IMG/VR virus record: IMGVR_UViG_3300044701_000569
Coordinates: 124,001-188,000 of that record
DNA: 64,000 nt
Strand: one strand, 5' to 3'
This document shows, one piece after another, positions 18,201-50,013 of the stretch. The notes under the pieces were generated by a model, which was given only the letters and a program-made list of their open reading frames with translations, searched no databases and was not told the DNA's origin. How positions within the stretch are numbered: position 1 is the first letter of the stretch; each line of letters starts with the position of its first letter. Position numbers and translations under genes: made by a program.

Positions 18201-21200
18201 AGCAGTTAATGTATACCTAAACGGATATCAGTTAGTACACAATAAAGACTATACATTTAACAATGAAGGGTTCTTAGTACTTGATAGTTATCAACAAGAA
18301 GGTGACATTCTTAGAATATACGAAACTTCGTCTACTGACGGATCATTTATTCCGCCAACACCTACTAAATTAGGTTTATATCCTTCTTATGTACCACAAC
18401 TTATTATAGATGATACCTATCTATCAGAAGAACCTGTTATTAACGGACCATTTAAAATTTATGGTGAAGATGAGACTACTTCAAAAATAGGTTGGTTTTA
18501 TCCTGTATACACAAGTCGTCGAGCTGCTCAAAACGCAGACTCAAATAATGCAGCAAAACAACTAGTTCTAGCAGGTTATAACAGAGTACTGTATATTCCT
18601 ACTAATACAGGTATTGAAGCCGGAACTGATAATGTTGAACTTGATGAGTATCCTGTAGGAACTGCTGTAATACGAGGACACGACGGTAGTTTTGTTAAGG
18701 CATTTAAGGATTATAGAGATACCCTTATAATAGATCTTGAAAAACGAATATTCAATAATATTAAAGTTTTTTATAATCCACTAGAAACTGAGCTTCTTTA
18801 CGGTGAAGGAACGCTAAGTCTGTTTGATTTTGTACCCGGCAAATTTAGAAAAACTGAATTTACTAGAAACGAAATAAACGAATCTTTACGAGGATCTTTC
18901 GTAGAGTGGCTAAGCCTAGTTGAGACTGATTACACTAGTAATTATTTTTACGAAAGAGAAAATCAATTTACATTTAACTACAGTACCATGACTAACGTAG
19001 TTGATGGAACTAGTCTACCTGGATTTTGGAGAGGCGTTTACAAAGAACAATTTGATACTGATCGTCCTCACAGTCACCCATGGGAAATTTTAGGATTTAC
19101 TATTAAACCAAAGTGGTGGAACGAAGTTTATGGACCTGCTCCTTATACTGGTAACAACGGTGTTATGTGGGGTGATATTGAGAAAGGCATTATAAGAGAG
19201 CCTGGAAAACAGGTTAGGGTTTTAGAAAAGTTTGCTAGACCGGGACTCACTTCATTCATACCAGTTGACAGCAAAGGTAGATTGCTATCTCCTATTGCTG
19301 CTAATATTGCAAAAAATTTCGTATACAGAAATACTACACAGAGTTTTGAATTTGGTGATGAAGCTCCTGTTGAAACCGCTTGGAGAAGAAGTTCAGAGTA
19401 TCCGTTTGCTATTCTTAGAGCATGGGTTTTAAATCAGCCATCAAAAGCTATGGGCGTAGGATTTGATACCTCTAGACTTGATAAGAACTTAGTAGGACAG
19501 TATGTTTATAAAGATACTAAAAAGCATTTAACATTAGCAGATCTTCAGTTACCAAATACTTATGAAGACGCTTCAAGAATTCAAACATCGGGATTAATAA
19601 ATTTCATTTATAATCTTGTAGCAAGTAATATCTTAACAGTTTATAATGACTATAAAACAGACCTAGTATCTATTAGAAATCAATTAGGATTAAAACTAGG
19701 CGGTTTTACAGATAAGCAAAAGTTAAAAATTGTACTAGATAGTAGAAGTCCTAAAGCTAGTGAATCAGAAGGTGTATTTGTTCCTGAAGAGAACTACCAA
19801 GTATTTTTAAACACAAGTTCACCTGTTGAAACGATTGTATACAGTGGTGTAATTGTTGAAAAAGCACCTGACGGATTTATTATTCGCGGCTACAATAACG
19901 AAATTCCTTATTTTAAATATTTTCAAACTCAGTCAACACAGAATGATGTTACTGTAGTAGTTGGCGGTATAACTGAAAGTGCAAGCGAATGGGCAGCTAA
20001 TAGACGTTATGTTAAAGGTCAGCTGTTAATCAATTCTTTCAAATACTATAGAGTAACAGATAATTTTACTTCAGGACCAAGTTTTACAACAAATAATCTT
20101 GCTCTGTTATCTGACATTCCTATAGTAGGTGGTAAAAGAGCACAATTTAAGAAAAATTTCTTAAAATCAAGTAACAAAATTCTAACCTACGGTACTAAGT
20201 TGTCAACGTCGCAAGATGTTGTAGATTTTATATTAGGTTATGATGCATATTTAAAATATCAAGGTTTTACATTTGATTATTTTAATCGCGAAACAAACTT
20301 TGTTGAAAATTGGGACAATGCAGCTAGAGAATTTTTATTCTGGACTACACAAGGATGGGCGTCAGGAACAACTATATCGTTAAGTCCGGGTGCAACATCT
20401 CTAAATTTATCAACAGCTTACTCTGTTGCTGATGATATTCTTGATGTATTCTACAGCTACGGTGTAGTAAAGCAGGATGGCGATGCTTTAGATAGAAAGT
20501 TTATTTCTATATATAGAAATAAAAATGTGTTTGAAGTAAGACCTAAAAACACTAATGATGGCATATACGGTGTTTCTATTCCTGTAGTTCAGAAGGAACA
20601 TGTACTATTAATAGATAATACCACAGTGTTCAATGATATAATCTATCAACCATCTACTGGTTATAGACAGGAAAGATTAAAAGTTACAGGTTATCGATCA
20701 GATAACTGGACTGGCGGCCTAGATATTCCTGGATTTATATTTGACGATGCAACAATAACAGACTGGGAACCTTGGCAAGATTATAGCGTAGGATCTCTTG
20801 TAAAGTTTAAGCAATTTTATTATGTTGCAATATATCAAATTACTGGATCAGAAGAGTTTAATAGTAATTTTTGGTATAGACTCAATGAAAAACCTGTACC
20901 AAAATTATATACAAACTTTGATTATAAGATAAATCAATTTTCTGATTTTTATGATTTAGATTCTGATAACTTTGATGCTGAACAGCAAAGATTAGCTCAA
21001 CATCTAATAGGTTATCAGAAGAGAGAATATCTTGCTAATATCATTAACGATGACATCAGCCAGTATAAGTTCTATCAAGGATTCATACAAGACAAAGGAA
21101 CAAAAAATGCAATAACAAAATTGTTTGATCCTTTAAGTGGTTCTGATAGAGATAGTTTTGATTTCTACGAAGAATGGGCTATACAAGTAGGTCGTTACGG

Positions 21201-24200
21201 TGCTGTTGACAATGTTCAACAGGTTGAATACACTCTTGAAGAAAAGAAATTCCAAGAAGCGCCGCAGCCAGTACAGTTAGTTGATCAGTTACCAGTTGAA
21301 TCGTTTGATAATATCTATAGAATAAGACCATTTGAAGTTTACGACAAACCTGAAGGATACAATCATAAGCCGTTTCCAACTACTACAATAGATCCCGACT
21401 ATCTATTAAGCAGTGGTTATGTACACGAAGAAGATGTTGAGTACAAGGCCGGCTCTATTGATGATTTAGAAATAACAGATATTAATCAGCTACAGCTAGG
21501 ACAGTATATTTGGTTAACTAGAACTAACAGTGATGGGTGGACCGTTTATCAAATTTCTGATGCTATTGCAAATGTTACTGCCTTAGAAGCACTAGGTACG
21601 TTTACAGAAAACAACAAACCTATAATCAAATTAACTCTTGATAAATGGGCTGCTCCTATATTAAATGTAGGTGAATTAATTGCTGTCAAAGGAGCGACCG
21701 AATTTAATCTTACAGGTATTCATGAAGTAGATTTTCTAGATGCTGCAACAGTAAACATAGTTGCACCAGTTGAAAATGAAATAGAGCCTTTTGATAATCA
21801 GAAGTTTGTACTTGTAAAGTTAAGACAAGTACGTGTTTCTAATCTAGCTGCATTGAATAATCTAATACAAGAACAGATCTACGACAAGCAAAAAGTTTGG
21901 GTTGATAATTACAAAGATAATAATTGGGGTGTGTATCAGAATTCTCCAGTATACGGTGCAGTACAACAAGCACTAACTAATCCTGCACTGTTTGACAGTA
22001 CAGATCATAGATACAGCACTTCGATGACAGCAACAGATAATAATTATAATCTGTTTGTTTCTGCACCTGGCGACGGCGACGGCGTCGTATATCATTATAG
22101 AAGAACTAGGGATACAAATAATCTAATACAGGAACCAGCAATTAATCCTGATAGAGATCTCTTTAATACTACTAATAGTAACTTTGGCGAAAGTATTTCT
22201 GTAAGTCCTGACGGAGAGTTCTTAGCAGTTGGTATACCAGATGCTAGCCAAATAAAAACAAGATTTAGAGGTAATTTTGATCCCACACAGACTTATAATA
22301 AAAATGAAATAGTAAAATACAGAGAAAGTTTGTGGAAAGCCAATAGAGTTATTCTGCCAACAACAACAAATCAGCCATTCTCAACATTTGATACCTATGT
22401 ACAATTGGTGAACGAAGCTGACAGTGATTCTACAGCTATTAAACTTTTAATATCGGGTAATCCTGGTCTAGATAATAGTATATCAGATCATTTCTTAGTA
22501 CGTGCTCCGTTAGATATGTACCTTGGTACAAAATCTGGAGACCTAGTAAAACTAGGATGGAACCCAGTAAGTTTTGCTTATCCAACACTTGATCCTTATA
22601 CCCCGTTTGACAATGAGATACCTGAACTGTCTTCTTATATTGAAAATACACATGAGATACAGGCTAAGATTGATCACATATTATTTGTTGAAACATTTGT
22701 TGGTCTACCTGAGGTAGGAGAGCGAGTAACAACAAATACCGGGTCAGGCATAGTTCATTATGTAGATATCAAGGGTGATAGTGCAGTTATTTACGTTAAG
22801 GAAACTAACGGTACTTTTGATTTAACTGGTGAATTGTTTATTGATGACGCAGACTTTATTGGTTTTTATTCTGAAGAAGAAACTTATAATGTTGCAAGCA
22901 ATCTAGGAGGTTTCTGGTTATTTAAAACCTATAGAGTTGGAGAACCACCCGAATCAGGTTATACTAGTGAGCTGTCAAATGTAGACGGTTTTACTTACAA
23001 TAATAATAGCCGCTGGTATGACATTGGTAGAGGACTAGTTTATGTAGACGTTGTTACTGAAGAACACATAGGTAATCCTGGCAGACCATTTAACTATTAT
23101 AATATACAAAAGACTATCAGTGAAATAGGTGTTTACATCAGTAATAATAATCAAGCTAGTTTTATTGGACAGCTAACTTATTTTGGTGATCCTGGTAGAA
23201 CCTATCTTGTAGATACAGAAGATGAATATCCATCTAATCTATGGGTAGTCCGTGGATCAAAGGTTTATACTGACACTATTGAAACAGGTGACCACATTGA
23301 ATTTCGTCTTTATGATCTAGACAACAGAACTATCGATCTAGCATCAGCTGGACTTAGCTACGACATTTTAAATAAAGAACAAACTGTTTACGATCTTTGG
23401 GACGGATACATTGATTTTGAATACACTCGCTTCAACGCAGATGGTGATCCTTACGAGCCTGTAATAGGCGATATCTTACAAGATATACAAACACCGTTTG
23501 ATGAATTTGGAGGATTAGCACTTACTAGCTATTCAACTAGCACTGCTGAAGTTGTATTTTATCAACGAAAATTTAACTTTGTGCGTGTGTTTGTAAAGAA
23601 TAAAACAGGTAACTGGGCAAGACTAAACAACATTGGAAGAGTTGAAGTACGTAGACTTGCTAATGTTACTGCACGTGGATCAAGTGATGTTTCGAGAACC
23701 ATCGCTACAATAAACGATTTTAACAATGATGTTGTGCTAGGAAATGATCTTATTGGTAAGCTAGTTGTTTTCCAACATACTAGTAATTTTCCTCTAGTTT
23801 CAAATCCTTATATAACAGACGAAGAATATTATTTCTTCAATGAAGTAATTGATAACGGTGCTGCTAGAGACGAAAATCCACCAAACAGTTTAAACAAGGA
23901 CTATACGCAGGTTTATAATATTCCGGGCGATGAGTTTGGTGCAGTAGGTCCTAATAGTGCAGGCGCAGTTGCAATTTATAACAAAACTGCAAACGGTTCT
24001 TATAAGCTTCTAGTTCTGTTAAGTAGCGAATATGCAACGACTAATAGAAAATTTGGACAAAAAGTTAAGATAATACAGAACAAAGGTCTGTACACATTAT
24101 TTGCTTCTAGCGTTGGTGACACTTCGGACGATTACGGATCAATTGAAATCTTCAAACACGGGTACGAACCTGGCGAATATTTTAAAGGCAATTGGAAAGT

Positions 24201-27200
24201 ATCATCTAGTTACCTAAAAAATGATATTGTACGTAACAGAGACAATTATTACAAGGCAATAAAAAATATTTCTCCTGATGATAGTATTAATATTAATAAT
24301 TCTATCTACTGGAATAAAATTAGCTGGAGACAAGCTAAGGATGAAAATTATCAAGGAGCCCTTAATACTGCGTATCCTTATTCAATAGGATCTATAGTAA
24401 GTTATGACGGCTCATTATATAGAGCAAAAACTAATATTGCTGCAGGATCTAGTTTAAACTTTAATGAGTGGGAATTAGTATCAAACAATATTGATTATTT
24501 GGGATATTTGCCTAACAGAACAAGCAATGCGTTTTATGGTGAAGAAATTTATTCACCGTCAAGCACTTATATAGAACAGTTTGCTATAGATTATGACGTT
24601 AGCGATAGCGGATCAGTTATAGCAGTACTCACAAAAGAAGTTGATTCAGATAGTACTTCTAGAGTCAATCTAGTAATTTATAGATTAATAGATGAGCAAT
24701 ATCTTCTAGATCAAACTATTGAGTTAGGTAAAAATACAACTAGAGTGTCAATAAGTCCTCAAGGAAATATTATTGCTGTATCTGAACCTGAAAATGATGA
24801 AAGAAAAACTGATCAAGGTAAGGTGGTTGTTTACAGACAAGTTAATGGAGCATTTGCTTATGCACAAACTCTGCTTCCTCCGCAAAATGAGGAATCTGAA
24901 AAGTTTGGTTCAAGCATAGCTTTTAGCGATGATAATTTTGTTGTGTCAAGCCTTAACGGTGACATGAAGATACCAACTACATTTGATGTGGATAATAATA
25001 ACGAAACAACGTTTGATAGAGACTACACAACATTTAAAAATGTTATTAAAGATACGGGTGTTGTTTATATATTTGAAGATATTGAAGATAGTTTAGTATA
25101 TTCTGAATCGTTCAGATATGATAATGCTACAATACAGTTTGGTGAAAACTTGTTATCTAATGGTAATCATATCTACGTTGGTATGCAGAGTGTTGGCAAC
25201 GACAACTATAAAGGAACAATTCTTAACTATCGTAAAACAAAGAATGCTGTTGCATGGAACAGAACAAGAGAACTAGTCCCTCCTGTAGATGTTTCAAAGA
25301 TTCGAGGAGCGTTCTTATATAATAAAAGAACTAATCAAATTGTAACTTATTTAGATTACATAGATCCTATACAGGGTAAGATAGCAGGACCTGCAGAACA
25401 AGAAATTACTCATAGAGTTCCTTATGACCCTGCTACATACAACGTTGGTGTATTTACAGGCGTTGACAAAGATACTTTCTGGGCCGAAGAACATGTGGGC
25501 GAAGTATGGTGGAATCTAAAAACAGCAAGATTTACATACCCATATCAAGGAGATATACAGTATCAAAAGGCCAATTGGAATGAGCTACAGCCTGGATCGT
25601 CTATCGATGTTTATGAATGGGTTGAAAGTCGATTCCTTCCTAGTCAGTGGGACACACTAGCTGATAGTGAGTCTGCACTAAACGAAGGCATAAGCGGAGT
25701 TTCAATTTACGGTGATAATCTCTACACTCAAAAGTTTGTATATGATCCTGTTTCTAAAACATTTAGTAATAGATTTTATTTTTGGGTAGGTAGAAAATTA
25801 ACAGTACCCAAAGTTGAAAACAGATCTCTAAGTGTATTTGATATAGCTAGACTAATAGCAACGCCACGAGAGCAAGGCTACAGATTTGTTAACTTCTTAG
25901 GTTCAGATAGATTCCTGTTGAATAATTGTGATTCTTTAATCTATAACGATGATATAGTATTGAATATTAAATATGCAACTGGTAAAAACACAGAACAACA
26001 GCTTCACAGTGCATACTATATTATGTCAGAAGGATTAGAATCAAGTTCTATTCATCCCGACATTGAACGAAAATGGTTTGATAGTTTGATAGGATTTGAT
26101 GAACAGAATAGAACAATTCCTGACACAAAACTAACTGTAAAACAAAAATACGGAGTTCAAAACAGACCTCGACAGAGTATGTTTGTAAACAGAGAAGAAG
26201 CTCTAAAGCAGGTTATTGAAAGAATAAATTCTGTACTAGTTACTGAGTCTATTTTAGATAGTTATAACACATCGTCGCTGATGTTAAAGGATAACGAACC
26301 AACTGAAATAGATAGAACTTTTGACAGCACAATTGATACACTTGAAGAATTAAGATTTGTTAGTACAAACAAGATTTCTCAAGCTGTTCTTACACCTATA
26401 ATTCAAAATGGACGCATTGTTCGTGTTGATATAGATGATCCAGGTCGAGGATATAAAATTGTACCTACATATACACTGGTAGGACCAGGAACTGATGCTG
26501 AATTTGAGCTTACTATTAATAACCTAGGACAAATTACAGATGTAACTATTCTTAATTCAGGAAGAGGTTATGATGATAACACTAGAATCCTTGTTAGAAA
26601 ACATAGTGTATTGGTAAAAAATGATGCATCAATACACGGTAAATGGGCAATTTATTCTTGGAATAATGAAACAAGTTCATGGTTTAGATCTACTATACAA
26701 GGGTATGATGTAACAGCTTATTGGTCTTATGCTGACTGGTATGCTAATGGCTATAACACCTTTACTAAAATAGATCATGAGATTGATGTAACTGATGACA
26801 TTTTTAAACTAAATGTAAATTTAGGTAGTACTGTAAGAATAGCTAATGTAGGATCAGGTGGTTGGTTACTTCTAGAAAAAATAGCAGCAGTTGACTCTGA
26901 AGATTACACTGTTAATTACAAAACTATTGGTAGACAGAACGGAACTATACAATTTAAAGACACTCTGTATAATTTCCAAAAAAATACTATAGGATTTGAT
27001 AATAGAAACTATGACAGTGTTGCATACGACAATCTTTCAGCAAGGGAATTGCGAATCATTTTAAATGCAATAAAGAACGATATTTTTGTAGGTAATTTAA
27101 AAGTTGAATATAACAAATTATTCTTTGCATCTTTACGATATATTCTTACTGAACAGAATTATGTTGATTGGTTCTTTAAGACTAGCTTTATTAAGATTAA

Positions 27201-33338: not shown

Positions 33339-33339
33339 G

Positions 33340-35232: not shown

Positions 35233-35239
35233 TTTACGA

Positions 35240-35245
35240 TAAATA
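35240..35245 (+). promoter_or_regulatory. late promoter core ATAAATA upstream of tail fibre 3
   Basis: gaTAAATAa followed by a TAGGGGTT RBS-like element and ATG 35275. Confidence 0.55.
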
Positions 35246-35274
35246 ATATAAAGCACTATTAGGGGTTATTACAG

Positions 35275-36777: not shown

Positions 36778-37719
36778 ATGGCAGACATAAGTGCAGCAAG
36801 GCTTAATAACTTACAGTCTAGACTGGAGCTGATACTCGGCAACGGTTCTGGACCAAGCGGTTACGGTCAACCTTTAATAAGTAGTCAAGTATCTAATATA
36901 GACGGAAGTCTTATCTCTGCTGCCGATATCAATGCAATCTATGCTGATATGGTTAAAGCACGAGTGCATCAAGTAGGTGTTGAACCAACAGAAATAGCAG
37001 AATTAATATCTAATCTTAATATAATTGCAGAAGATACTAGTTTTTTCATAGGTGATGACGGTATTACAGTAGTAGATCCTGATGGATCTAAAAAGGGTAT
37101 TATTGATTATGAAACCTTAATGTCTACTATAGAAACAGACAAATTTTCTGCGCATACATCACAAGTAACTTTAGAACCTGGTATAACCGGTCAGCGAACT
37201 GCTGACTGGAATGGTTTAATCTATCAAGAAATTACTGTAAATTTCAACAATGCCGATCATCGTAGACACTTTTTTAATACAGGCGGCAACATTAGATTTA
37301 CTGGAAATAACAGCGGCGCTACTCTACCTAAAGGGTTAGATTGGAATTTATTGTTAACTGAAGTAGGATCAGTTAACTTTACCTACGCAACAACTTCATC
37401 AACCGGTGCTGGAAGCGGTTCAGCAATTGGTAACTATCAATTAACATCAACATATCAAACTGTGTTCTCTAGAATCGGCGGCGGAACCTACACTGGAATT
37501 TATAGCGGTGTCTATGCTGGTAATCTTTACACTATAAAAGCAAGATCACTGTCTTCCAGCAGCATACAATTTAGAATTGAATTTAACGATGTTGTTACTG
37601 ATCCTATTATAGACAACAATGTTGATGGTCGTTTGATTAGCACAGTACAGCACGTAAGAGCAAATTCTTCAGCAGTTTCGGTAGTAGCACCTACTTACAC
37701 GATCGATACTACTCTATAA
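36778..37719 (+). CDS. virion structural protein (paralog of 37771..38763)
   Basis: In the late tail block; shares GYGQ, D.V.ARVHQ.G, IETDK, RRHFFN.GG.IR and GSAIGNY.LTS.YQ with the next gene. Confidence 0.6.
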   Translation: MADISAARLNNLQSRLELILGNGSGPSGYGQPLISSQVSNIDGSLISAADINAIYADMVKARVHQVGVEPTEIAELISNLNIIAEDTSFFIGDDGITVVDPDGSKKGIIDYETLMSTIETDKFSAHTSQVTLEPGITGQRTADWNGLIYQEITVNFNNADHRRHFFNTGGNIRFTGNNSGATLPKGLDWNLLLTEVGSVNFTYATTSSTGAGSGSAIGNYQLTSTYQTVFSRIGGGTYTGIYSGVYAGNLYTIKARSLSSSSIQFRIEFNDVVTDPIIDNNVDGRLISTVQHVRANSSAVSVVAPTYTIDTTL

Positions 37720-37741
37720 TAAATCCTCATTCTTTAGAGTA

Positions 37742-37749
37742 TATAAATA
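37742..37749 (+). promoter_or_regulatory. exact T4 late promoter TATAAATA inside an 8-bp inverted repeat (37735-37754)
   Basis: TAGAGTAT-ATAA-ATACTCTA, followed by TAGGGGTT and ATG 37771. Confidence 0.72.
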
Positions 37750-37770
37750 CTCTACTAGGGGTTTTATAAT

Positions 37771-38763
37771 ATGCCAACGACAACGTTAGTAACAGCTACG
37801 AGATATAATCTGCTCAAGAATAGGATTCACACTATTCTTGGAACTTCACTAGTATCTACGCCAACATCTGGATACGGACAGAGTACATACAGTAGCGGTG
37901 TTACCGGAAACTATAATACAAACACTACAGCTACAGATCTAATAGATGATCAGGATTATAGAGAAATTTATATTGATCTAGTTAGAGCTCGAGTACATCA
38001 AATAGGATCAGCAGCTTTTACACAGCAGCCTACTCCCCTAGGTGACTTTTCTGCTAATGGAGCAGCCACTGACAAGGTAGCAGAAGCTTATATTGCCGGC
38101 TTAGAAAGTCTTATGACTTCAATAGAGACTGATAAATTATCTATATTTGAATCAACTCAGGCAACATTAGAAAATTTAAGAAATTCTCTTGGTACAACTA
38201 TACAAGGTTCTAGGTTTGAATCTATAAGCGGAACTTGGAACTCTACCCTATCGTTTATTTTTACAGTTAGTTTTACGTCAGCAGAAGAACGTCGACATTT
38301 TTTCAATGCAGGCGGCAAGATTAGAATTACTGCAAGTAAAACTGGCGCAGATGTTAATCCAAAAACAGCTAGCTGGAGAACCTTATTATCTGGTTTAGGA
38401 CAGATTATTTTTAATCACAACAGTACTACTAATAGTGCTAGCTTTGGAACAGGCTCTGCAATCGGAAATTACGGATTAACTAGCTCTTATCAGTTAATAT
38501 ATAGGGGTTATTCTAGTGCATATTTTTCAAATGCTGTGGAAGTGTATGCTTTACAACTTAATTCTTCACAAATACAGTTTAGAGTCTATCTAGCAGATCA
38601 ACGTAGCGAAAATATTGACGAACAGGTGTTTGGCGATTTCTTTGTTAGCCCAACTATCCTACGTCCGGAAGGAACAGTTAGTATAAACGGAACTGTTTAT
38701 CCTACTGTGCAGATAACCACAGCACCTGTAGGTGCTGTCATTACCAATCTAACAGCAATCTAA
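37771..38763 (+). CDS. virion structural protein (paralog of 36778..37719)
   Basis: Own late promoter; motifs shared with the preceding gene. Confidence 0.6.
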   Translation: MPTTTLVTATRYNLLKNRIHTILGTSLVSTPTSGYGQSTYSSGVTGNYNTNTTATDLIDDQDYREIYIDLVRARVHQIGSAAFTQQPTPLGDFSANGAATDKVAEAYIAGLESLMTSIETDKLSIFESTQATLENLRNSLGTTIQGSRFESISGTWNSTLSFIFTVSFTSAEERRHFFNAGGKIRITASKTGADVNPKTASWRTLLSGLGQIIFNHNSTTNSASFGTGSAIGNYGLTSSYQLIYRGYSSAYFSNAVEVYALQLNSSQIQFRVYLADQRSENIDEQVFGDFFVSPTILRPEGTVSINGTVYPTVQITTAPVGAVITNLTAI

Positions 38764-38793: not shown

Positions 38794-38868
38794 ATTAGAT
38801 AACATATTCAGTTTCTTACGACTTCAATCCATAAACTGACTATATAATTAAAACCCTTGGAGACTCTT

Positions 38869-39222
38869 ATGGACGAAAGATTAGAAAAAGCTCTTAAGTT
38901 TAGCAATTACATGGTTACGCTAAACAATCAAAAACGAGTCATTAAAGAAAAGTATTTTGAAGACCTCATGTACTTTAACAGTGGTTGCCAATTTACTGTT
39001 ACGAAAGAATTAATTACGTTTGTTGGTCTGTTAATAGAACGAGGTAATGACTCTGATGTTGTACTAACTGACGATAACGACATACCTGCTAAGATATCAG
39101 ATCTAGGTTCTTTTTATGATGACATCCTTAATATTTACTTTACAGCATCAAATACGTATTACACAAAATACGAAGAACTTAAGAAAAACAGAAAAATAGA
39201 AACTCTAGTAAACCATGAATAA
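38869..39222 (+). CDS. hypothetical protein, possibly a tail-fibre-assembly-associated small domain
   Basis: ATG 38869 follows GGAG (the track TTG start lies within the RBS). G..F.V...L...LTDDND.P..I.DL..F pattern is reminiscent of DUF4376-type domains (weak). Confidence 0.5.
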   Translation: MDERLEKALKFSNYMVTLNNQKRVIKEKYFEDLMYFNSGCQFTVTKELITFVGLLIERGNDSDVVLTDDNDIPAKISDLGSFYDDILNIYFTASNTYYTKYEELKKNRKIETLVNHE

Positions 39223-40072
39223 TTCAAGAGGCGTTGTTTTATTTGCTAGAAACAATGGCAAACTTGATTATGTTAAACAGGCTGTATTTCTAGCAAAGAG
39301 AATTAAGAAATATCTAAATTTACCAACAACTGTAATAACAGATAGTGCTGATTATTTAGAAAAAGCATTTGATACAAATATTTTTGATAAAATTATTACA
39401 GTTGAATATTCTGAAACTAAAAATAATAGAGCTTATTTTGACGGTTCATTGTTTCACAAAACTGCTCCATTTAAAAATGACATGCGAGACGGTGTCTACA
39501 ATTGGTCACCTTACGATGAAACAATCTTAATGGATACTGATTATATCATATGCAATGATCTACTATTAAAATGTTTTGAGTCAAACAATGATTTAATGCT
39601 GTTTAAAGATTCATACGACCTAGCTCATTTTAGAAATCAAGATGAATTCAAACACATTAGTGACTTTACTATAGATTTTTATTGGGCTACAGTTGTGTTC
39701 TTCAGAAAAACAGATGAGAATGAAGTCTTTTTTGATCTTATACGCCATATTAAAAAAGAATGGAATCACTATAGACGTGTCTATCAAATAGATTCAGGAT
39801 TGTTTAGAAATGATTTTGCGTTTAGCATAGCTGTTCATATTATGAATGGATTTTCTAAAGGGTCTTTTGTAGCACCTTTGCCGGGAAAACATTACTATAC
39901 TATTGATAGAGATATTCTACAGAGTCTCGATGAAGACAGTATGTTATTTTTAGTAGAAAAGAAAGATCATTTAGGCGAATATACACTAATAAGAACTGAA
40001 AAACAAAATATTCACGTTATGAATAAGTTTAGTTTGGAACGAGTAATTGATGAGGAGATGTCTAATGGATAA
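39215..40072 (+). CDS. GT-A fold glycosyltransferase (GT8-like), paralog of 40065
   Basis: GVVLFA, SPYDETILMDTDY (DxD), YWATVVFFRK, RNDFAFSIA, H.MNK. Confidence 0.7.
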   Translation: MNNSRGVVLFARNNGKLDYVKQAVFLAKRIKKYLNLPTTVITDSADYLEKAFDTNIFDKIITVEYSETKNNRAYFDGSLFHKTAPFKNDMRDGVYNWSPYDETILMDTDYIICNDLLLKCFESNNDLMLFKDSYDLAHFRNQDEFKHISDFTIDFYWATVVFFRKTDENEVFFDLIRHIKKEWNHYRRVYQIDSGLFRNDFAFSIAVHIMNGFSKGSFVAPLPGKHYYTIDRDILQSLDEDSMLFLVEKKDHLGEYTLIRTEKQNIHVMNKFSLERVIDEEMSNG

Positions 40073-40910
40073 GAGTAGAGGCATCTTAGTATTAGCTCAA
40101 AATTCTACAGTAGCAAATTATGTTGAACAGGCTGCACTTTTAGCTATGAGCCTTAAAGTTACAAACCCTAGCACACTTATAAGTGTAGTTACTAATGATG
40201 AAGTTCCTACAGAATATGTAAAACTGTTTGATAAGATTATTCCTATACCGTTTGAAGATGATGCAGACGCAACAGAATGGAAGATTGAAAATAGATGGAA
40301 GCTATATCACGCAACACCTTATGATCAAACAATGGTATTGGATACTGATATGCTGATCCTACAGGATATATCAAGTTGGTGGAAGTTTTTAGAAAATTAC
40401 AAATTATATTTTACAACTAAAGTTTTTACTTATAGGGGCGAAGAAGTTACTAACGACTTTTATAGAAAAACTTTTACATCTAACAATCTTCCTAATCTAT
40501 ATAGCGGACTTCATTATTTCGAAAAGAGTAAACTAGCACTAGAGTTTTATACTTGGCTTGAACTTGTTATGCAGAACTGGGAATTGTTCTACGGATTGTA
40601 TGCTAAAGAAAATTATCCTGGTAGATGCAGTGTAGATGTTAGTGCAGCAATCGTAGCTAAAATTCTTGATTGTGACTCTGAAATTACAAACAATTATGCA
40701 GAATTTCCTACTTTTACTCATATGAAACCTCATATACAGAATTGGATTAGACCTAATGAAAAATGGCAAAACTGTGTTGGAGTTTACATTAATAGAAATT
40801 GTGAAATTAAAATAGGAAATTTTTCTCAGTTAGGTATCTTACATTATACAGAAAAAGATTTTGTAACACCTGAATTAATTGAACGCTATAGGAATTACCT
40901 ACATGTCTAA
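40065..40910 (+). CDS. GT-A fold glycosyltransferase (GT8-like), paralog of 39215
   Basis: GILVLA, KIENRWKLYHATPYDQTMVLDTDM (DxD), FTHMKP, LHYTEK. ATG 40065 after GAGGAG preferred. Confidence 0.72.
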   Translation: MDKSRGILVLAQNSTVANYVEQAALLAMSLKVTNPSTLISVVTNDEVPTEYVKLFDKIIPIPFEDDADATEWKIENRWKLYHATPYDQTMVLDTDMLILQDISSWWKFLENYKLYFTTKVFTYRGEEVTNDFYRKTFTSNNLPNLYSGLHYFEKSKLALEFYTWLELVMQNWELFYGLYAKENYPGRCSVDVSAAIVAKILDCDSEITNNYAEFPTFTHMKPHIQNWIRPNEKWQNCVGVYINRNCEIKIGNFSQLGILHYTEKDFVTPELIERYRNYLHV

Positions 40911-42288
40911 TTTTGCCGATTTTTTAAAAACACTAAACATTGAAGTAGATGTTGTAGCCAATTCTTTTGTCTATTATGATCCTACAAACGGAAAAATAGA
41001 AAAAATAGGTAACAAATATGTCAAAGACGATTCGTTATCAATACTAGAAGTTCATCACAGCACTGTAACTGATATTATAAATGGTACTAAGAGTCCTGAT
41101 GATTTTATTGTAGAGTACGATGTAGCTTTAAAACAGTTAGCTCTAAAAGAGAAGACATACGAAGATAACAATTCTAAAATAGATACTAGCATGCATCGCT
41201 TGCCTGTAGTAAGAACAGTTTCAGATGAAGCAGGCGACAGAAGTTCTTTAATTTTTAACGGCATCTACGACGGTGTTGAAGTTTTTATGTGGATTAGCGG
41301 AACTAGATTTACAAAAGGTATGCTAGTTTGGTATAAGAATACTGTTTACAAACTGTTAGAAGATATCGAATTAGAAGAGTTTGACGAATCAAAGGCAGAC
41401 GTATTTGTAACTGATGTAGTTGTATCTAATATAAAAAGCATTAATCATTTTGTTGAATACAAAGTCATGTTTAAATCTATTTTTGAAGGTGTACACGTAG
41501 ATGTATGGTATAGAGACCTAGAACATTTACCAGGGCAGCATGTTTGGATTTACAACAATGTTTATAGAATTAGAGAACATCAATCAGCTGATACTTCTTT
41601 TAATTTAGAAAATGCAGAACTTGTTCTAAGCAATGTTTTGCTGTATGGAGATATTAACAAATCTTTAACATTTGTTTCTGTGCTTTCCCCAGGAGATAAA
41701 ATTTTAGATAATAACAGGCTGTATCTTTGCTTAGATGAAAAGCTAAACGCAAAGATGCAAGAAAAGTCAATTGTTTTTTATACTTCAAAATATCAAGGAC
41801 TGTTATATGACGAAGAATTAAAAACTCTTACAAAATTTTCCTTTACTGAAAAGCATAATAAACTTCTAGCAGACAATGAAAAAATAAAAGATACTATTGA
41901 GTTGCTTGATAATAGCACTATTGAAGATGGCGCAAAGGTATTAATTGGCAAAAATTTGTACCTAGCTACTAGATTAGAAGTACGAGATATTGATGTAAAT
42001 GTTGTTCAAAATAATTTATTAGGTTGCTGGGAAATTTACCTAGGTAAGAAGACCAAAAGAAGTCTTCAAAAAATTAGTTATGTAGGACAAGACACATTGT
42101 ATTTCAGTGTTACATCTAAGTACGATCCTAATATACTTTATAGAACAATGGAATTTTCTTTAAGCAAACTGTTAAACGATGTTTCACAAATTTATCCCTA
42201 TCAAAATGATTGGGAACGAACTAGAGAAGATGTAAGTGTATACACTTCTAAGTTTTTTGATACCTACTCTCATGAGGTACTAGAATGA
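40903..42288 (+). CDS. hypothetical protein with degenerate CBM5/12-like repeats
   Basis: WISGTRFTKGMLVWYKNTVYKL and WYRDLEHLPGQHVWIYNNVYRI repeats; ATG 40903 overlaps the upstream stop. Confidence 0.6.
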   Translation: MSNFADFLKTLNIEVDVVANSFVYYDPTNGKIEKIGNKYVKDDSLSILEVHHSTVTDIINGTKSPDDFIVEYDVALKQLALKEKTYEDNNSKIDTSMHRLPVVRTVSDEAGDRSSLIFNGIYDGVEVFMWISGTRFTKGMLVWYKNTVYKLLEDIELEEFDESKADVFVTDVVVSNIKSINHFVEYKVMFKSIFEGVHVDVWYRDLEHLPGQHVWIYNNVYRIREHQSADTSFNLENAELVLSNVLLYGDINKSLTFVSVLSPGDKILDNNRLYLCLDEKLNAKMQEKSIVFYTSKYQGLLYDEELKTLTKFSFTEKHNKLLADNEKIKDTIELLDNSTIEDGAKVLIGKNLYLATRLEVRDIDVNVVQNNLLGCWEIYLGKKTKRSLQKISYVGQDTLYFSVTSKYDPNILYRTMEFSLSKLLNDVSQIYPYQNDWERTREDVSVYTSKFFDTYSHEVLE

Positions 42289-43208
42289 GCCAAAAAATTA
42301 AAGTTGTTGATTATGACATCATATACCTATCCTATGATGAACCAAATGCCGAAAAAAATTATGCAGATTTGTGTAAAAAGATACCGTGGGCAAAACGTGT
42401 TCACGGTGTTAAAGGATCCGATGCAGCACACAAAGCCTGTGCTCGTCTAAGCGAAACTGATAGGTTCATCACAGTTGACGGTGACAATGTTGTTAGAGAA
42501 GAATTTTTAAATCAAGAAATTGATTTTGTTGAACACACAGATCTTACAAATTGTGTAATCAGTTGGAGCGGCCGCAATGCTATCAACGGGTTAATGTATG
42601 GTAACGGTGGATTAAAATGTTGGCCTAAAGATTTTGTTCTCAATATGAAAACACATGAAGCAGCGGATCCAACAAACAAACACGCACAGGTTGACTTTTG
42701 CTGGGATGTGCAGTATATTCAAATGAACAGTTGTTATTCAGATGTATACAACAATGCTACGCCTGCACAGGCTTGGAGAGCAGGTTTTAGAGAAGGAGTT
42801 AAACTAGCTCTTGATAGAGGAGTAAAACCTTCAAAGGAAGACTTTCTAAAAAATCATTGGCGTTGTTTGCATTGGCTTTATATTTGGACAATGGTCGGAA
42901 CTGATATTGAAAATGGTAAATGGGCAATACTAGGGGCTAGAGAGGGTCTTTATAAAACTATGCTTACTGAATGGGACTATGTAAACGTTCGTGATTTTGA
43001 ATACCTTAATGATCTTTGGGCTAAAGAATTTGAAGCAATGCAAGATTCTGACATTGATTCTAGAACTACATTTCTTGGACAAGAACTTAGTGAAAAACTA
43101 AGCATTCCTATAGGTGAAGTACTAACATCGGATCAAAGTAAATTTTTTAAAACAGTTTACGAGCATCCTGCTAGAACTGATCACCAAAGGTTTATTGAGC
43201 GCCTATGA
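42285..43208 (+). CDS. glycosyltransferase-like protein (GT-A, DGD motif), paralog of 56199
   Basis: YDIIYLSYDEPNAE..Y..L......KRVHGVKGSDAAHK.CA...TDRFITVDGDN, LMYGNGGLK, AWRAGFRE.VKL. Confidence 0.62.
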   Translation: MSQKIKVVDYDIIYLSYDEPNAEKNYADLCKKIPWAKRVHGVKGSDAAHKACARLSETDRFITVDGDNVVREEFLNQEIDFVEHTDLTNCVISWSGRNAINGLMYGNGGLKCWPKDFVLNMKTHEAADPTNKHAQVDFCWDVQYIQMNSCYSDVYNNATPAQAWRAGFREGVKLALDRGVKPSKEDFLKNHWRCLHWLYIWTMVGTDIENGKWAILGAREGLYKTMLTEWDYVNVRDFEYLNDLWAKEFEAMQDSDIDSRTTFLGQELSEKLSIPIGEVLTSDQSKFFKTVYEHPARTDHQRFIERL

Positions 43209-44599
43209 GCAAAAGCTATTACAATATTAATGCAGAAAATATTAGAGAAGAACTAGATAAAGTAAGTTGTTCTATGTGTCTTGCTAAATGGACACAAGTT
43301 ACTATGCATTTGCATAACGGACACACACATAGCTGTCATCATCCTGTTCCCCATAAGATTCCTCTAGAAGAACTACTAGAAAGTCCCCACGCACTACATA
43401 ATACACGTTTTAAAATTGAGCAGAGAGAAAAAATGCTTAAAGGTGAACGACCTAAAGAGTGCGACTACTGTTGGAATATAGAAGATTTAGGCAAAGACTA
43501 TCTCAGCGACAGACATTTTAAAAGCGGAGAATATTGGAGTTCAGAATACAAAGATGAAATTCTAAAAGACCCACTACGCAAGGATTTTCTTCCTACATAC
43601 CTAGAAGTTAGTTTTTCAAATGTTTGCAATTTTAGCTGCATGTATTGCAGTCCGCAGATTAGTTCAAAGTGGGTTGACGATGTTAAAAGAAATGGTCCTT
43701 ATGATCTAGGTGATTTTAAACATGCTGATTTAAGTTATTTAGATCAAAAAGGTTTAACTCCTATACCTGAAAGGGAAGACAATCCTTATATTGACGCATT
43801 TTGGGAAATATGGCCTGAGTTATATCAAAAACTTAGAGTGTTTAGAATTACTGGTGGAGAACCTTTACTAAGCAAACATACTTGGAGAATTCTAGAGTAT
43901 GTTCAAGCTAATCCTAATCCTAACATTGAAATAATTATCAATAGTAATTTGTGTGTGCAAGATAATTTTATTGATAGATTAATAAAAATAGGTAATGATC
44001 TTATTACTAATTCTAAGGTAAAAAGATTTGAAATCTACACCAGTGTTGAGAGTGAAGGACGCCAAGCTGAATATATACGTCCAGGATTAGATTACGACAA
44101 ATTTATAAACAATCTAATACGTGTGACTACTGAGATGCCAATGATTAAATGGCGTTCAAAAGTAGTAATTATGGCAACATATAATCTGTTGAGTATACCT
44201 AGATTTAGAAAACTACTTGAATGGTTATTAGAGTACAGAAAAACTCATTCAAACCCTCAATGGAAAAACATTTGGATTGATATTAGTTATCTTCGTTATC
44301 CTAGTTGGCAAACGGTTAGTCTAGCTGACGAAAGTATGCTAAAGATTATAGAATCTGATCTTGAATTTTTAAAAGCAAACGATCAAAATATTGTAGGTTG
44401 GCACGGATTTCAAGATACAGAAATTGAAAAGTTTGCTAGAATGTATAAGTATGCTGTTGAGTCAAGACAGAAGCTAAATCCTATAGAAAAAGAACGTTTT
44501 TACAATTTCTTTAACCAGCATGATCAACGCAAGGGTTTTAATTTTGTAGAGGTGTTTCCTGAGTTGGAAGAATTTTATAATGACTGTAGATCGAAGTAA
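43205..44599 (+). CDS. radical SAM enzyme with an N-terminal Cys/His-rich twitch-like domain
   Basis: CNFSCMYC (CxxxCxxC), ITGGEPLL, INSNL; N-terminal CLAKW...HSCHHP...CDYCW. Confidence 0.92.
   Translation: MSKSYYNINAENIREELDKVSCSMCLAKWTQVTMHLHNGHTHSCHHPVPHKIPLEELLESPHALHNTRFKIEQREKMLKGERPKECDYCWNIEDLGKDYLSDRHFKSGEYWSSEYKDEILKDPLRKDFLPTYLEVSFSNVCNFSCMYCSPQISSKWVDDVKRNGPYDLGDFKHADLSYLDQKGLTPIPEREDNPYIDAFWEIWPELYQKLRVFRITGGEPLLSKHTWRILEYVQANPNPNIEIIINSNLCVQDNFIDRLIKIGNDLITNSKVKRFEIYTSVESEGRQAEYIRPGLDYDKFINNLIRVTTEMPMIKWRSKVVIMATYNLLSIPRFRKLLEWLLEYRKTHSNPQWKNIWIDISYLRYPSWQTVSLADESMLKIIESDLEFLKANDQNIVGWHGFQDTEIEKFARMYKYAVESRQKLNPIEKERFYNFFNQHDQRKGFNFVEVFPELEEFYNDCRSK
43779..43807 (+). repeat. 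29-nt exact direct repeat, copy 1 (copy 2 at 45148-45176)
   Basis: acaatccttatattgacgcattttgggaa occurs identically in both adjacent rSAM paralogs (encodes NPYIDAFWE). Confidence 0.85.
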
Positions 44600-45917
44600 A
44601 CTTTCAGAATACCATTTAATACATCTAAAGAAAAGTGACGAGATTTCGTCTACTTTCTGTTCTGCTAAATGGCATATGGTTACCCTGCATCTTGCACAGG
44701 GAGAAACTCATAGTTGTTACCATCCGTGGACACACAAAGTTCCCCTAGAAGAATTAAAAAATAATCCAGGTGCAATACATAATACACTCTTTAAAAAGAG
44801 TCAACGTAAACTTATGCTCAATGGAGAACGTCCTAAAGAGTGTGAATACTGCTGGCGTATGGAAGATTTAGGTAATATCAGTGATAGAATAATTCGTAAT
44901 GCTGAACCTTATGCTAAAAATGACCTAGACACTTTTAAAACATACACTGGCGACGAGGATGTCTACCCGCGCCATGTAGAAGTGAGCTTTAGTACAACCT
45001 GTAATCTTAAATGTTCTTACTGTAATCCTACAGTAAGTTCTAAGTGGCTTGAAGAAGTTAATCAATATGGCGGTTATAAAACAAGTACTGAGTTTAATGA
45101 CTATATCAAACCAGGTAAACCTCTACCATTTATATTAGATAGAGAACACAATCCTTATATTGACGCATTTTGGGAATGGCTACCGGACGCATACCCTCAT
45201 ATGCATGTCCTTCGTGTCACTGGCGGTGAGCCTCTTATGAGTAAACACACGTTTACTCTGCTGGATTACATTGCTGAAAATCCTAATCCTAAACTAGAAG
45301 TTGTAGTTAACTCTAATATGTGTGTGCCTGATAAGCTGATTGATCAAGCTATAGCAGCAGGTAAAAAGATAGTAGAACGTGTGGGTGTATTTAAGATGTT
45401 TGCAAGTCTTGACAGCGTTGGTGCTCAAGCCGAATATCAACGTTACGGTTTAAATTTTGAACAGTTTACAAAAAATGTAAGACGTTTCTTAGATGAAATC
45501 CCCAACAGCAAAGTTTCATTTACTTGCACCTTTAATGTATTCAGTGTTCCTAATGTAAAAGGCTTTATGGAATATATGTATAGTTTACATAAAGATTACG
45601 GTAAGAGAATAAACTTTGACACACCGTATTTGCGTTTTCCACCACATCAGTGTGTACAGATATTGCCAAATGAGTATGTAAAATATTTAGAGGCTGCTGA
45701 AGAATACATGATAGAAAAGTCATTTCCTCAGCTTACAATTGACAAGATTCAACGATTAAAAAGTTATATGACAAATAAAACTTTTACAGAAGAACAGTTA
45801 TCTACGTACAGAAAAGACTTTGTTATATTTGTAGACGAACACGATAAACGCAGAGGAACAAATTTCTTAGAGACTTATCCTGAGCTAAAAGAATTTTACG
45901 AGTTGTGTAATGAATGA
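44580..45917 (+). CDS. radical SAM enzyme with an N-terminal twitch-like domain; tandem paralog of 43205
   Basis: CNLKCSYC, VTGGEPLM, VNSNM; N-terminal CSAKW...HSCYHP...CEYCW. Confidence 0.92.
   Translation: MTVDRSKLSEYHLIHLKKSDEISSTFCSAKWHMVTLHLAQGETHSCYHPWTHKVPLEELKNNPGAIHNTLFKKSQRKLMLNGERPKECEYCWRMEDLGNISDRIIRNAEPYAKNDLDTFKTYTGDEDVYPRHVEVSFSTTCNLKCSYCNPTVSSKWLEEVNQYGGYKTSTEFNDYIKPGKPLPFILDREHNPYIDAFWEWLPDAYPHMHVLRVTGGEPLMSKHTFTLLDYIAENPNPKLEVVVNSNMCVPDKLIDQAIAAGKKIVERVGVFKMFASLDSVGAQAEYQRYGLNFEQFTKNVRRFLDEIPNSKVSFTCTFNVFSVPNVKGFMEYMYSLHKDYGKRINFDTPYLRFPPHQCVQILPNEYVKYLEAAEEYMIEKSFPQLTIDKIQRLKSYMTNKTFTEEQLSTYRKDFVIFVDEHDKRRGTNFLETYPELKEFYELCNE
45148..45176 (+). repeat. 29-nt exact direct repeat, copy 2
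   Basis: Identical to 43779-43807. Confidence 0.85.
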
Positions 45918-50012: not shown

Positions 50013-50013
50013 T

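What the first reader, a model, noticed from the sequence alone, without database searches (positions are those of the whole stretch)
40903..42288. Non-enzymatic protein in the operon shares the aromatic repeat found in the giant baseplate protein
Seen: WISGTRFTKGMLVWYKNTVYKL (41290) and WYRDLEHLPGQHVWIYNNVYRI (41506), plus weaker LSPGDKILDNNRLYLC and IEDGAKVLIGKNLYLA, follow the same W.....[YF]..G..V.Y...Y pattern as five repeats in the 5131-aa protein. Known: this pattern resembles CBM5/12 carbohydrate-binding modules. Inference: a glycan-binding scaffold or adaptor between the GT genes that could target the modifying enzymes to virion parts. It is the best sequence-level link between the enzyme cluster and the virion.
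Basis: partly seen in the sequence, partly recalled or inferred. Interest (0 to 1): 0.6.

Follow-up and report, generated by a model that had tools for sequence, protein, structure and literature searches.

The report
Sugar-binding-like module carrier beside phage glycosyltransferases
A fast-evolving, non-catalytic protein of a 358-kb marine jumbo phage carries two divergent CBM5/12-type (chitin-binding-like) modules that in related phages are fused to the neighbouring glycosyltransferases, so it most likely works as a detachable targeting subunit of a glycosylation operon next to the tail genes.

Summary
The ORF 40903-42288 (461 aa) is real and belongs to an unnamed marine phage family. Its two strong repeats, R1 and R2, are true duplicates. 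They fold as CBM5/12 modules and are related by profile to the five repeats of the 5131-aa virion protein (hhalign score 34.7 against a shuffled maximum of 13.6). A profile of the module, searched against 1.84 billion proteins, found only its own family and canonical CBM_5_12 proteins. The two weaker repeats, R3 and R4, are related to each other but not demonstrably to CBM5/12. The upstream neighbours (285 and 287 aa) are GT-A glycosyltransferases by fold, with an invariant DxD. The 307-aa downstream gene is only weakly GT2-like, and the genes after it are radical SAM enzymes. The new result is that the R2-type module moves among the operon's proteins. In 72 related operons it sits on this frame protein (68), at the N-terminus of the 287-type GT (5), or inside the 285-type GT (2, where the frame protein has no modules). 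This supports a targeting role for the GTs. What the module binds, and whether the virion is the target, is untested. The link to the giant protein is at superfamily level only. The finding is a new variant of a known kind, of moderate interest.

The parts
40903..42288 (+). Target ORF, 461 aa: constant N/C 'frame' with inserted modules. Its start overlaps the upstream gene's end by 8 nt; its stop overlaps the downstream start by 4 nt.
   Evidence: AF2 model with mean pLDDT 82.9
40903..41232 (+). N-terminal frame domain (aa 1-110). Present in all family members, including the module-less 204-aa forms.
41254..41427 (+). R1 module (aa 118-175), CBM5/12-like.
41470..41649 (+). R2 module (aa 190-249), CBM5/12-like and the most conserved part of the protein. 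D200, W202, Y203, G211, Q212 invariant; H208, H213, W215, Y221 at 90% or more.
41650..41757 (+). R3 hairpin (aa 250-285, GDxILxNNxLY). Travels with R2 as one unit of about 88 aa.
41758..41892 (+). Variable middle beta segment (aa 286-330), the least conserved domain-sized part.
41893..41988 (+). R4 hairpin (aa 331-362), related to R3 only.
41989..42285 (+). C-terminal frame domain (aa 363-461), a beta-sandwich. Its last ~60 residues are shared with the 184-aa slot protein of Ralstonia phage RsoM2USA.
39215..40072 (+). 285-aa retaining GT-A-fold glycosyltransferase-like gene (invariant D107-x-D109).
40065..40910 (+). 281/287-aa paralog of the 285-aa GT-A gene and the immediate upstream neighbour. 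The ORF opens at TTG 40047; the likely start is ATG 40065.
42285..43208 (+). 307-aa immediate downstream neighbour. Very conserved, has a TVDGDN motif, and is only weakly GT2-like.
38857..39222 (+). 121-aa first gene of the tightly packed unit, preceded by a 93-nt gap. Syntenic in 72 loci and in RsoM2USA.
19990..20106 (+). Giant protein repeat 1 (aa 1579-1617).
   Evidence: score 28.0
20764..20880 (+). Giant protein repeat 2 (aa 1837-1875).
   Evidence: score 18.3
22276..22392 (+). Giant protein repeat 3 (aa 2341-2379).
   Evidence: score 14.7, borderline
24193..24309 (+). Giant protein repeat 4 (aa 2980-3018).
   Evidence: score 18.8
24376..24489 (+). Giant protein repeat 5 (aa 3041-3078).
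   Evidence: score 28.8

Best explanation
The 461-aa protein is a non-catalytic module carrier in a conserved glycosylation operon of marine jumbo myoviruses. The operon order is 121-aa gene, two GT-A paralogs, this protein, a 307-aa GT2-like gene, then radical SAM genes, and it lies just downstream of the tail-fibre genes. The protein has a constant frame (N-terminal domain plus C-terminal beta-sandwich) into which a variable number of divergent CBM5/12-type modules are inserted. Shown here: the fold and homology of the modules, the GT-A fold of the neighbours, the conserved synteny, and the movement of the same module subtype among the frame protein and the two GT-A enzymes in relatives. Inferred: the modules recognise the acceptor, or an already-added sugar on it, and hold the GT-A enzymes on it. 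They would do this in trans through the frame protein in this phage and in cis in the fusion variants. That would resemble the way the lectin domain of polypeptide GalNAc-transferases guides their GT-A catalytic domain. The acceptor is most likely a tail or virion component made from the adjacent late genes, but this last step is the weakest.
For: R1 and R2 are CBM5/12 by fold. They are also CBM5/12 by profile: vs this phage's Pfam-positive copies Prob 80.7%, score 25.1. An exhaustive search with the module profile gave 85 hits in 1.84e9 proteins, namely its own family and then multi-CBM_5_12 proteins, 10 of 10 tested at 173-394 bits. The 285-aa neighbour has a GT-A fold: 333 PDB hits at E<=1e-3, led by GT6 a3GalT/ABO, GT8 glycogenin/GlyE, UGGT and LARGE1. 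It has an invariant DxD, and the 287-aa gene is its paralog. Synteny of the block holds in 70-79 IMG/VR loci and in cultured phage RsoM2USA, with overlapping start and stop codons. Fusions: (R2-R3)x1-2 at the N-terminus of the 287-type GT in L013, L057, L068, L069, L075, P0127 and P0149; 2-4 modules inserted after residue ~68 of the 285-type GT in P0152 and P0125, whose operons have module-less 219-223-aa frame proteins. Module location over 72 operons is tabulated. R2 is the most constrained region, with invariant polar and aromatic residues. Precedent for GT-A plus lectin domain: PMC4432651, PMC5716993, PMC11635297.
Against: Pfam's CBM_5_12 model does not reach threshold on the target. By my own reading of the alignment, positions conserved in this phage's canonical copies (the 'HTS' motif and a trailing Trp) are absent from R1 and R2, so the ligand may not be a glycan at all. 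The best structural neighbours of R2 are modules in phage receptor-binding and tail-fibre complexes (8fqc_P1, 9rkv_M), which fits a virion adhesin equally well. Operons in L079/L080 and RsoM2USA lack the modules altogether, so the modules are accessory. The function of the frame is unknown.
Confidence: 0.45

Rival explanations
1. It is a virion protein: a tail-fibre-associated adhesin or decoration protein. Its CBM5/12-like modules bind a host surface polysaccharide during adsorption, and its frame docks it onto a fibre. Its position beside GT genes would then be incidental or reflect co-expression.
For: It lies in the late tail block right after three tail-fibre paralogs. It is the least conserved gene of the 10-gene block in 19 of 22 loci, with median identity 35.6% against 57-73% for most neighbours. 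Module number varies from 0 to 4, as in receptor-binding proteins. The best structural matches of R2 are in phage Milano and 7-7-1 receptor-binding/tail-fibre complexes, the cyanophage Pam1 tailspike RBD and baseplates. The N-terminal domain weakly resembles tail-fibre assembly chaperones.
Against: The same module subtype is repeatedly fused to cytoplasmic-type GT-A enzymes, and in two operons it is present only there, which is hard to explain for an adhesin. There is no PHROG tail or structural family hit. The low overall identity comes from linkers and the middle segment, while R2 itself is the most conserved part. The chaperone resemblance has no sequence support.
Confidence: 0.25
2. It is the acceptor rather than the adaptor: a protein glycosylated by the flanking GT-A enzymes, with the Tyr/Trp-rich modules carrying the modified residues. 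The GT fusions would be self-glycosylating forms, as in GT8 glycogenin.
For: The neighbour's fold matches include glycogenin and the protein-glycan-modifying GT8 GlyE, UGGT and LARGE1. The modules have invariant Tyr, His and Asp residues. Module and enzyme occur in one chain in relatives.
Against: The CBM5/12 fold is a binding module in every characterised case retrieved. Operons without any module keep all three GT-like genes (RsoM2USA), so the GTs must have another acceptor. There is no direct evidence.
Confidence: 0.12
3. The repeat resemblance to the giant protein is chance similarity of aromatic-rich beta hairpins, and the protein has no relation to CBM5/12.
For: Pfam finds nothing in the target at E<=10. 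R3 and R4 are not distinguishable from shuffled controls.
Against: Profile-profile scores lie far above reversed, column-shuffled and random-window controls. The exhaustive search retrieves only CBM_5_12 proteins outside the family. Structural superposition at rmsd 1.3-1.7 A covers whole solved domains.
Confidence: 0.03

Closest known systems
CBM5/CBM12 chitin-binding modules (Pfam PF02839; e.g. S. griseus ChiC ChBD 2d49/1wvv, S. marcescens ChiB CBM5, B. circulans ChiA1 ChBD 1ed7, Vibrio COD tandem CBM12 4ny2)
   Same: Same small beta fold of about 45 aa (rmsd 1.3-1.7 A). Same W-x6-[YF]-x2-G-x2-V-x-[YW]-x4-Y spacing. Tandem arrangement as in Vibrio COD. Profile-level homology.
   Different: Below Pfam's threshold. 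Lacks positions conserved in this phage's canonical copies (my reading of the alignment). Has its own invariant polar set (D200, H208, Q212, H213). R2 is always followed by an extra R3 hairpin, making a unit of about 88 aa. It is attached to a non-catalytic frame or to glycosyltransferases rather than to glycoside hydrolases or deacetylases. Its ligand is unknown.
CBM5/12-like modules in phage tail and baseplate proteins (Agrobacterium phages Milano 8fqc and 7-7-1 9rkv, cyanophage Pam1 tailspike 7eea, Klebsiella KP1 baseplate 9f4a, T4 gp24 insertion domain 1yue) and the five repeats of this phage's 5131-aa protein
   Same: Same module. The target profile scores higher against the giant's repeats (34.7) than against the canonical copies (25.1).
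   Different: Those modules sit in large structural proteins. The target's R2 subtype was found only in the ~200-640-aa frame family, in GT-A-type enzymes and in a few unassigned ORFs and fragments. It does not co-vary with the giant.
Lectin-domain-bearing GT-A glycosyltransferases (polypeptide GalNAc-transferases with a CBM13 ricin-type lectin domain; MGAT4A/B)
   Same: A GT-A catalytic domain is paired with a carbohydrate-binding-type module that guides acceptor choice. Relatives of this operon have exactly that one-chain architecture (PMC4432651, PMC5716993, PMC11635297).
   Different: The module type is CBM5/12-like, not ricin-type. In this phage the module is on a separate polypeptide. 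The enzymes are GT6/GT8-like by fold, not GT27. Activity and ligand are untested.
Phage virion glycosylation operons (mycobacteriophage GTs next to capsid and tail genes; Freeman et al. 2023, as cited in PMC12619734)
   Same: Phage-encoded GTs lie beside structural genes on the same strand.
   Different: No targeting-module subunit was mentioned in the passages read. Glycosylation of this phage's virion is not shown.

Membership tests
CBM5/12 (Pfam PF02839 CBM_5_12) | Match to the Pfam model at or above the gathering score (26.2 bits) | tested here: not met
   No hit in the target at E<=10 or in the six-frame genome scan at E<=1. Orthologs in two relatives reach only 17 and 19.5 bits, at positions that map to R1. 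The giant protein reaches 31.1 bits.
CBM5/12 (Pfam PF02839 CBM_5_12) | Compact beta module of about 40-60 aa that superposes on solved chitin-binding domains | tested here: met
CBM5/12 (Pfam PF02839 CBM_5_12) | Profile-level sequence homology to accepted members | tested here: met
   hhalign vs 8 Pfam-positive copies of the same phage: Prob 80.7%, P 1.3e-5. The module profile searched against 1.84e9 proteins retrieves, outside its own family, long multi-repeat proteins; 10 of 10 tested carry 7-14 CBM_5_12 copies each.
   R3 and R4 share the G-x2-[VI]-x5-LY register, but against R1/R2 or the giant's repeats they score within shuffled controls. They are related only to each other.
CBM5/12 (Pfam PF02839 CBM_5_12) | Exposed aromatic binding face as in characterised members | tested here: inconclusive
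   Aromatics W202, Y203, W215 and Y221 are conserved. By my reading of the alignment, the region after the last strand lacks the residues conserved in canonical copies. No residue-level structural mapping was possible.
CBM5/12 (Pfam PF02839 CBM_5_12) | Binding of chitin, cellulose or another glycan | not testable with these tools
   Needs a glycan array, pull-down or ITC.
GT-A glycosyltransferases (flanking 285/287-aa genes) | GT-A Rossmann-like fold with a DxD motif | tested here: met
   AF2 pLDDT 87, pTM 0.88. 333 PDB matches at E<=1e-3, the top ones all GT6/GT8/GT24-type, prob 1.00, about 250 aligned columns, TM 0.45-0.50. D107 and D109 are invariant. The 287-aa gene is a paralog at Prob 97.7% with the same motif. 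No Pfam hit at threshold.
GT-A glycosyltransferases (307-aa downstream gene) | Recognisable GT2-type domain | tested here: inconclusive
   Atlas cluster names say 'Glycosyltransferase 2-like'. Pfam Glycos_transf_2 matches 2 of 15 family members, best E 0.009. No PDB sequence match. Not folded.
Lectin-guided GT-A enzymes (GalNAc-T-like architecture) | Catalytic GT-A domain and binding module in one polypeptide | tested here: not met
   They are separate genes in the window. The feature is met in relatives: L013, L057, L068, L069, L075, P0125, P0127, P0149, P0152. So this is a 'works like' comparison, not membership.
Phage tail fibre / receptor-binding proteins | Homology to a tail-fibre or structural family, or presence in virions | tested here: inconclusive
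   No significant PHROG hit. Structural matches to fibre proteins cover only the 45-aa module. RsoM2USA proteomics covered only 10 abundant bands (PMC8504454).
Tail-fibre assembly chaperones (Caudo_TAP / Phage_tail_APC; Mu 5yvq_B) | N-terminal domain homologous to the chaperone fold | tested here: inconclusive

The most novel reading that the evidence does not exclude
The protein is a trans-acting lectin subunit for phage GT-A glycosyltransferases, a split version of the catalytic-plus-lectin design of GalNAc-transferases. Its chaperone-like N-terminal domain docks on the tail fibres encoded just upstream, and its CBM5/12-type modules read the growing glycan. Together they would direct glycosylation of the adsorption apparatus of abundant marine jumbo phages. 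The module can be re-allocated by evolution among three operon proteins.
Probability: 0.2. Interest if true: 0.7.

Novelty: new variant of a known kind. Interest (0 to 1): 0.5.

Why it matters
Virion glycosylation by phage-encoded glycosyltransferases is known from very few systems, and how such enzymes find their acceptors is unknown. This work defines a well-populated, unannotated marine phage operon: 159 family members by word search and 79 viral loci. In it, a divergent CBM5/12 module is shared between a non-catalytic frame protein and two GT-A enzymes. The natural fusion variants mark the likely functional partners, so there is a concrete hypothesis to test. Practically, Pfam's CBM_5_12 model misses this subtype, and the alignment built here (A5) detects it. 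A cultured relative, RsoM2USA, carries the module-less core operon and could serve as an experimental entry point.

Tried and rejected
- Pfam, PHROGs and NCBIfam on the target gave nothing significant.
- tblastn of the target and blastn of the region against 50,697 cultured phage records gave no match.
- PDB sequence-profile searches for the 285-aa, 307-aa and N-terminal-domain families gave nothing meaningful.
It was not run, so there is no evidence either way.
- Promoter and terminator scans showed no enrichment over shuffles and are uninformative.
- Co-variation of modules in the frame protein with CBM repeats in the giant was not seen. L080's phage has a module-less frame protein but still has the giant with a repeat. 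RsoM2USA lacks both, which is anecdotal.
- The 'moraphage' paper (PMC12619734) describes a different lineage (up to 307 kb, Bacteroidota hosts) and was not pursued.
- RsoM2USA virion proteomics identified only 10 abundant bands (PMC8504454) and is uninformative.
- The word search with the 204-aa module-less frame gave 6 unnamed proteins.
- The Atlas named-cluster feature search for the frame gave no usable hit.
Full report
**What is there**

The window is bases 124001-188000 of a 357,559-bp IMG/VR virus record with GC 39%. Its gp6-like baseplate wedge protein is 34-38% identical to those of the Rak2/GAP32/Atu_ph07/SCTP-2 group of jumbo myoviruses.

The ORF 40903-42288 translates cleanly to 461 aa. 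Pfam, PHROGs and NCBIfam give no significant match, and there is no homolog in 50,697 cultured phage records. It belongs to a well-populated family: 159 hits, mostly 445-462 aa, from Tara and other marine metagenomes, none informatively named.

**The repeats**

They sit inside longer family-conserved blocks, R1 (aa 118-175) and R2 (aa 190-249).
- R1 and R2 are true duplicates: 34 bits with HMMER, and hhalign Prob 99.2%, 1e-19.
- The weaker repeats R3 and R4 share the G-x2-[VI]-x5-LY register and are related to each other (score 23.7 against a control max of 16.2). They cannot be told apart from shuffled controls when compared with R1/R2 or the giant's repeats.
- R2 and R3 always travel together as one unit of about 88 aa.

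**Relation to the giant protein and to CBM5/12**

The 5131-aa ORF (15256-30651) follows the gp6-like wedge gene and matches a 'virion structural protein' PHROG at 860 bits. Pfam finds CBM_5_12 in it at 31.1 bits, above the 26.2 cutoff.

The R1+R2 family profile matches the giant's five repeats at hhalign score 34.7, P 5.5e-8. The controls were:

| Control | Score |
|---|---|
| Reversed template | 9.9 |
| Column-shuffled | 8.0 +/- 1.8, max 13.6 |
| 200 random windows of the giant | 8.6 +/- 1.6, max 14.0 |

Each repeat alone scores 14.7-28.8.

Further points:
- Among all 799 genome ORFs, the giant is the best non-self HMMER hit (E 1.6e-5). Next is a 1326-aa protein rich in canonical CBM_5_12.
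- The target profile also matches eight Pfam-positive copies from this phage (Prob 80.7%, score 25.1), and the giant's repeats match them at 38.5.
- A profile of the R2-R3 unit (A5) searched against 1.84 billion representative proteins found only 85 hits. These were the family itself and then long multi-repeat proteins. All ten of those tested carry 7-14 Pfam CBM_5_12 copies.
- Pfam's model gives sub-threshold hits of 17-19.5 bits in two target orthologs, at positions that map to R1.

**Structure**

An AF2 model built from 42 family members has mean pLDDT 82.9, above 90 in R1 and R2.
- The tandem CBM12 pair of V. cholerae COD spans R1 plus R2.
- Foldseek against viral models returns many proteins labelled ChiC_BD, CBM5/12 or chitin-binding type-3.
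- The C-terminal 100 residues form a generic beta-sandwich.

It is unresolved for R3 and R4.

**Context**

Upstream lies a T4-like baseplate module (hub/lysozyme, gp25-like and gp6-like wedge, the giant), then three paralogous tail-fibre genes.

From 38857 onward the genes overlap or abut: a 121-aa gene, a 285-aa gene, a 287-aa gene (probably starting at ATG 40065), the target, a 307-aa gene, then seven radical SAM genes.
- The 285-aa protein folds confidently (pLDDT 87, pTM 0.88) as a retaining GT-A glycosyltransferase. It has 333 PDB matches at E<=1e-3, led by GT6 a3GalT/ABO transferases, GT8 glycogenin and GlyE, the UGGT catalytic domain and LARGE1. It has an invariant D-x-D.
- The 287-aa immediate neighbour is its paralog.
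- The 307-aa gene is only weakly GT2-like.

The block from the tail fibres to the 307-aa gene is syntenic in 59-79 related viral loci. The core order is also kept in the cultured Ralstonia jumbo phage RsoM2USA. There the slot is held by a 184-aa protein homologous only to the target's C-terminal ~60 residues.

**The key new result**

Domain HMMs run over all related loci show a constant N/C frame with 0, 1, 2 or 4 modules inserted. A shape search of the ESM Atlas likewise matches the frame alone to viral ~190-aa clusters, one with 1462 members.

The same R2-type module also occurs on the GT enzymes:
- It sits at the N-terminus of the 287-type GT in L013, L057, L068, L069, L075, P0127 and P0149.
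- It is inserted after residue ~68 of the 285-type GT in P0152 (2 copies) and P0125 (4 copies).
- The operons of P0152 and P0125 keep the same gene order but have module-less frame proteins of 219-223 aa.

Over 72 operons the module is located as follows:

| Module carrier | Operons |
|---|---|
| Frame protein only | 63 |
| Frame protein + 287-type GT | 5 |
| 285-type GT only | 2 |
| None | 2 |

Further ORFs (L066, L077) join R2-R3 to a DxD-containing domain with a weak nucleotide-diphospho-sugar transferase signal. In contrast, the insertion in a 330-aa-family ortholog (L013) consists of canonical CBM5/12 copies, not the R2 subtype. The module thus behaves as a part of the operon that any of three proteins can carry. 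This is Rosetta-stone-type evidence for a shared function with the GT-A enzymes.

**Constraint**

The target is the least conserved gene of its 10-gene block in 19 of 22 loci (median identity 35.6%). The variability lies in the linkers and the middle segment. R2 is the most conserved region, with invariant D200, W202, Y203, G211 and Q212 and near-invariant H208, H213, W215 and Y221. That pattern suggests a specific binding site.

**Interpretation**

The best-supported reading is a non-catalytic carrier of CBM5/12-type targeting modules that serves the adjacent GT-A enzymes. It would be a split analogue of the catalytic-plus-lectin design of GalNAc-transferases and MGAT4 (PMC4432651, PMC5716993, PMC11635297). 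What the modules bind, and whether the acceptor is a tail or virion component, is inference from gene position only.

A virion adhesin role remains a serious rival. The evidence for it is the location in the tail block, the variation in module number, the structural neighbours in receptor-binding complexes, and a weak chaperone-like N-terminal domain. That last point has no sequence support.

The link to the giant protein is real but at superfamily level. Canonical CBM_5_12 is common in this phage, and relatives with module-less frame proteins still have the giant with its repeats.

**Verdict**

The case for working with the GTs is strengthened, while the case for the virion as target is untested. 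This is a new variant of a known kind, a divergent CBM5/12 subtype shared between a frame protein and glycosyltransferases in an abundant marine phage operon, and it is of moderate interest.

Noticed in passing
window 43205-52504: Seven tandem radical SAM genes. Five have a SPASM-like hit N-terminal to the rSAM core. The first is NCBIfam N_Twi_rSAM, 'twitch domain-containing radical SAM protein', at 314.7 bits. The number and kind of rSAM genes differ between related loci. Such an array beside tail and GT genes is unusual, and its substrate is unknown.
   Followed up: partly
window 53717-56197: Three consecutive ORFs of exactly 276 aa each. The first had no Pfam, PHROG or NCBIfam match; the other two were scanned with Pfam only and also had none. 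None of the three has homologs in the 79 related loci. Their mutual similarity was not checked.
   Followed up: no
own genome G000:C1 about 94300-99500, minus strand (outside the window): Two large ORFs (1334 and 1831 aa open frames) each carry about 7 canonical Pfam CBM_5_12 copies, many above threshold. So CBM5/12 is used widely in this phage.
   Followed up: partly
window 36778-38763; L013:1284-2516: The 313-aa and 330-aa genes are paralogs (35% identity via L013). Their orthologs range from about 300 to about 1680 aa in related loci, as modular fibre-like proteins do. The L013 ortholog has two canonical CBM5/12 copies inserted.
   Followed up: partly
window 31284-36768: Three tail-fibre paralogs share an N-terminal domain (phrog_15511/14394). 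The third has a Peptidase_G2/IMC-like C-terminal region that is sub-threshold in Pfam.
   Followed up: no
window 40047-40072: The '287-aa' ORF opens at TTG 40047, but orthologs begin at the Met equivalent to ATG 40065 (281 aa). The TTG-extended N-terminus is probably not translated.
   Followed up: yes
L081 (Ralstonia phage RsoM2USA MG752970.1, ORF349-354): A cultured jumbo phage keeps the core operon order, with a module-less 184-aa slot protein. The operon lies just downstream of the tail sheath gene (ORF359) and the 21.1-kDa virion protein ORF356. All of these ORFs are annotated as hypothetical.
   Followed up: partly
L002 (IMGVR_UViG_3300031857_007934, 156 kb): A second IMG/VR record carries a target copy that is 100% identical at the protein level. 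It is probably the same phage sampled in another record.
   Followed up: no
contigs of L005, L053, L071, L080: The giant virion protein is conserved in size (5117-5295 aa open frames) across marine relatives, with weak CBM_5_12 hits.
   Followed up: no
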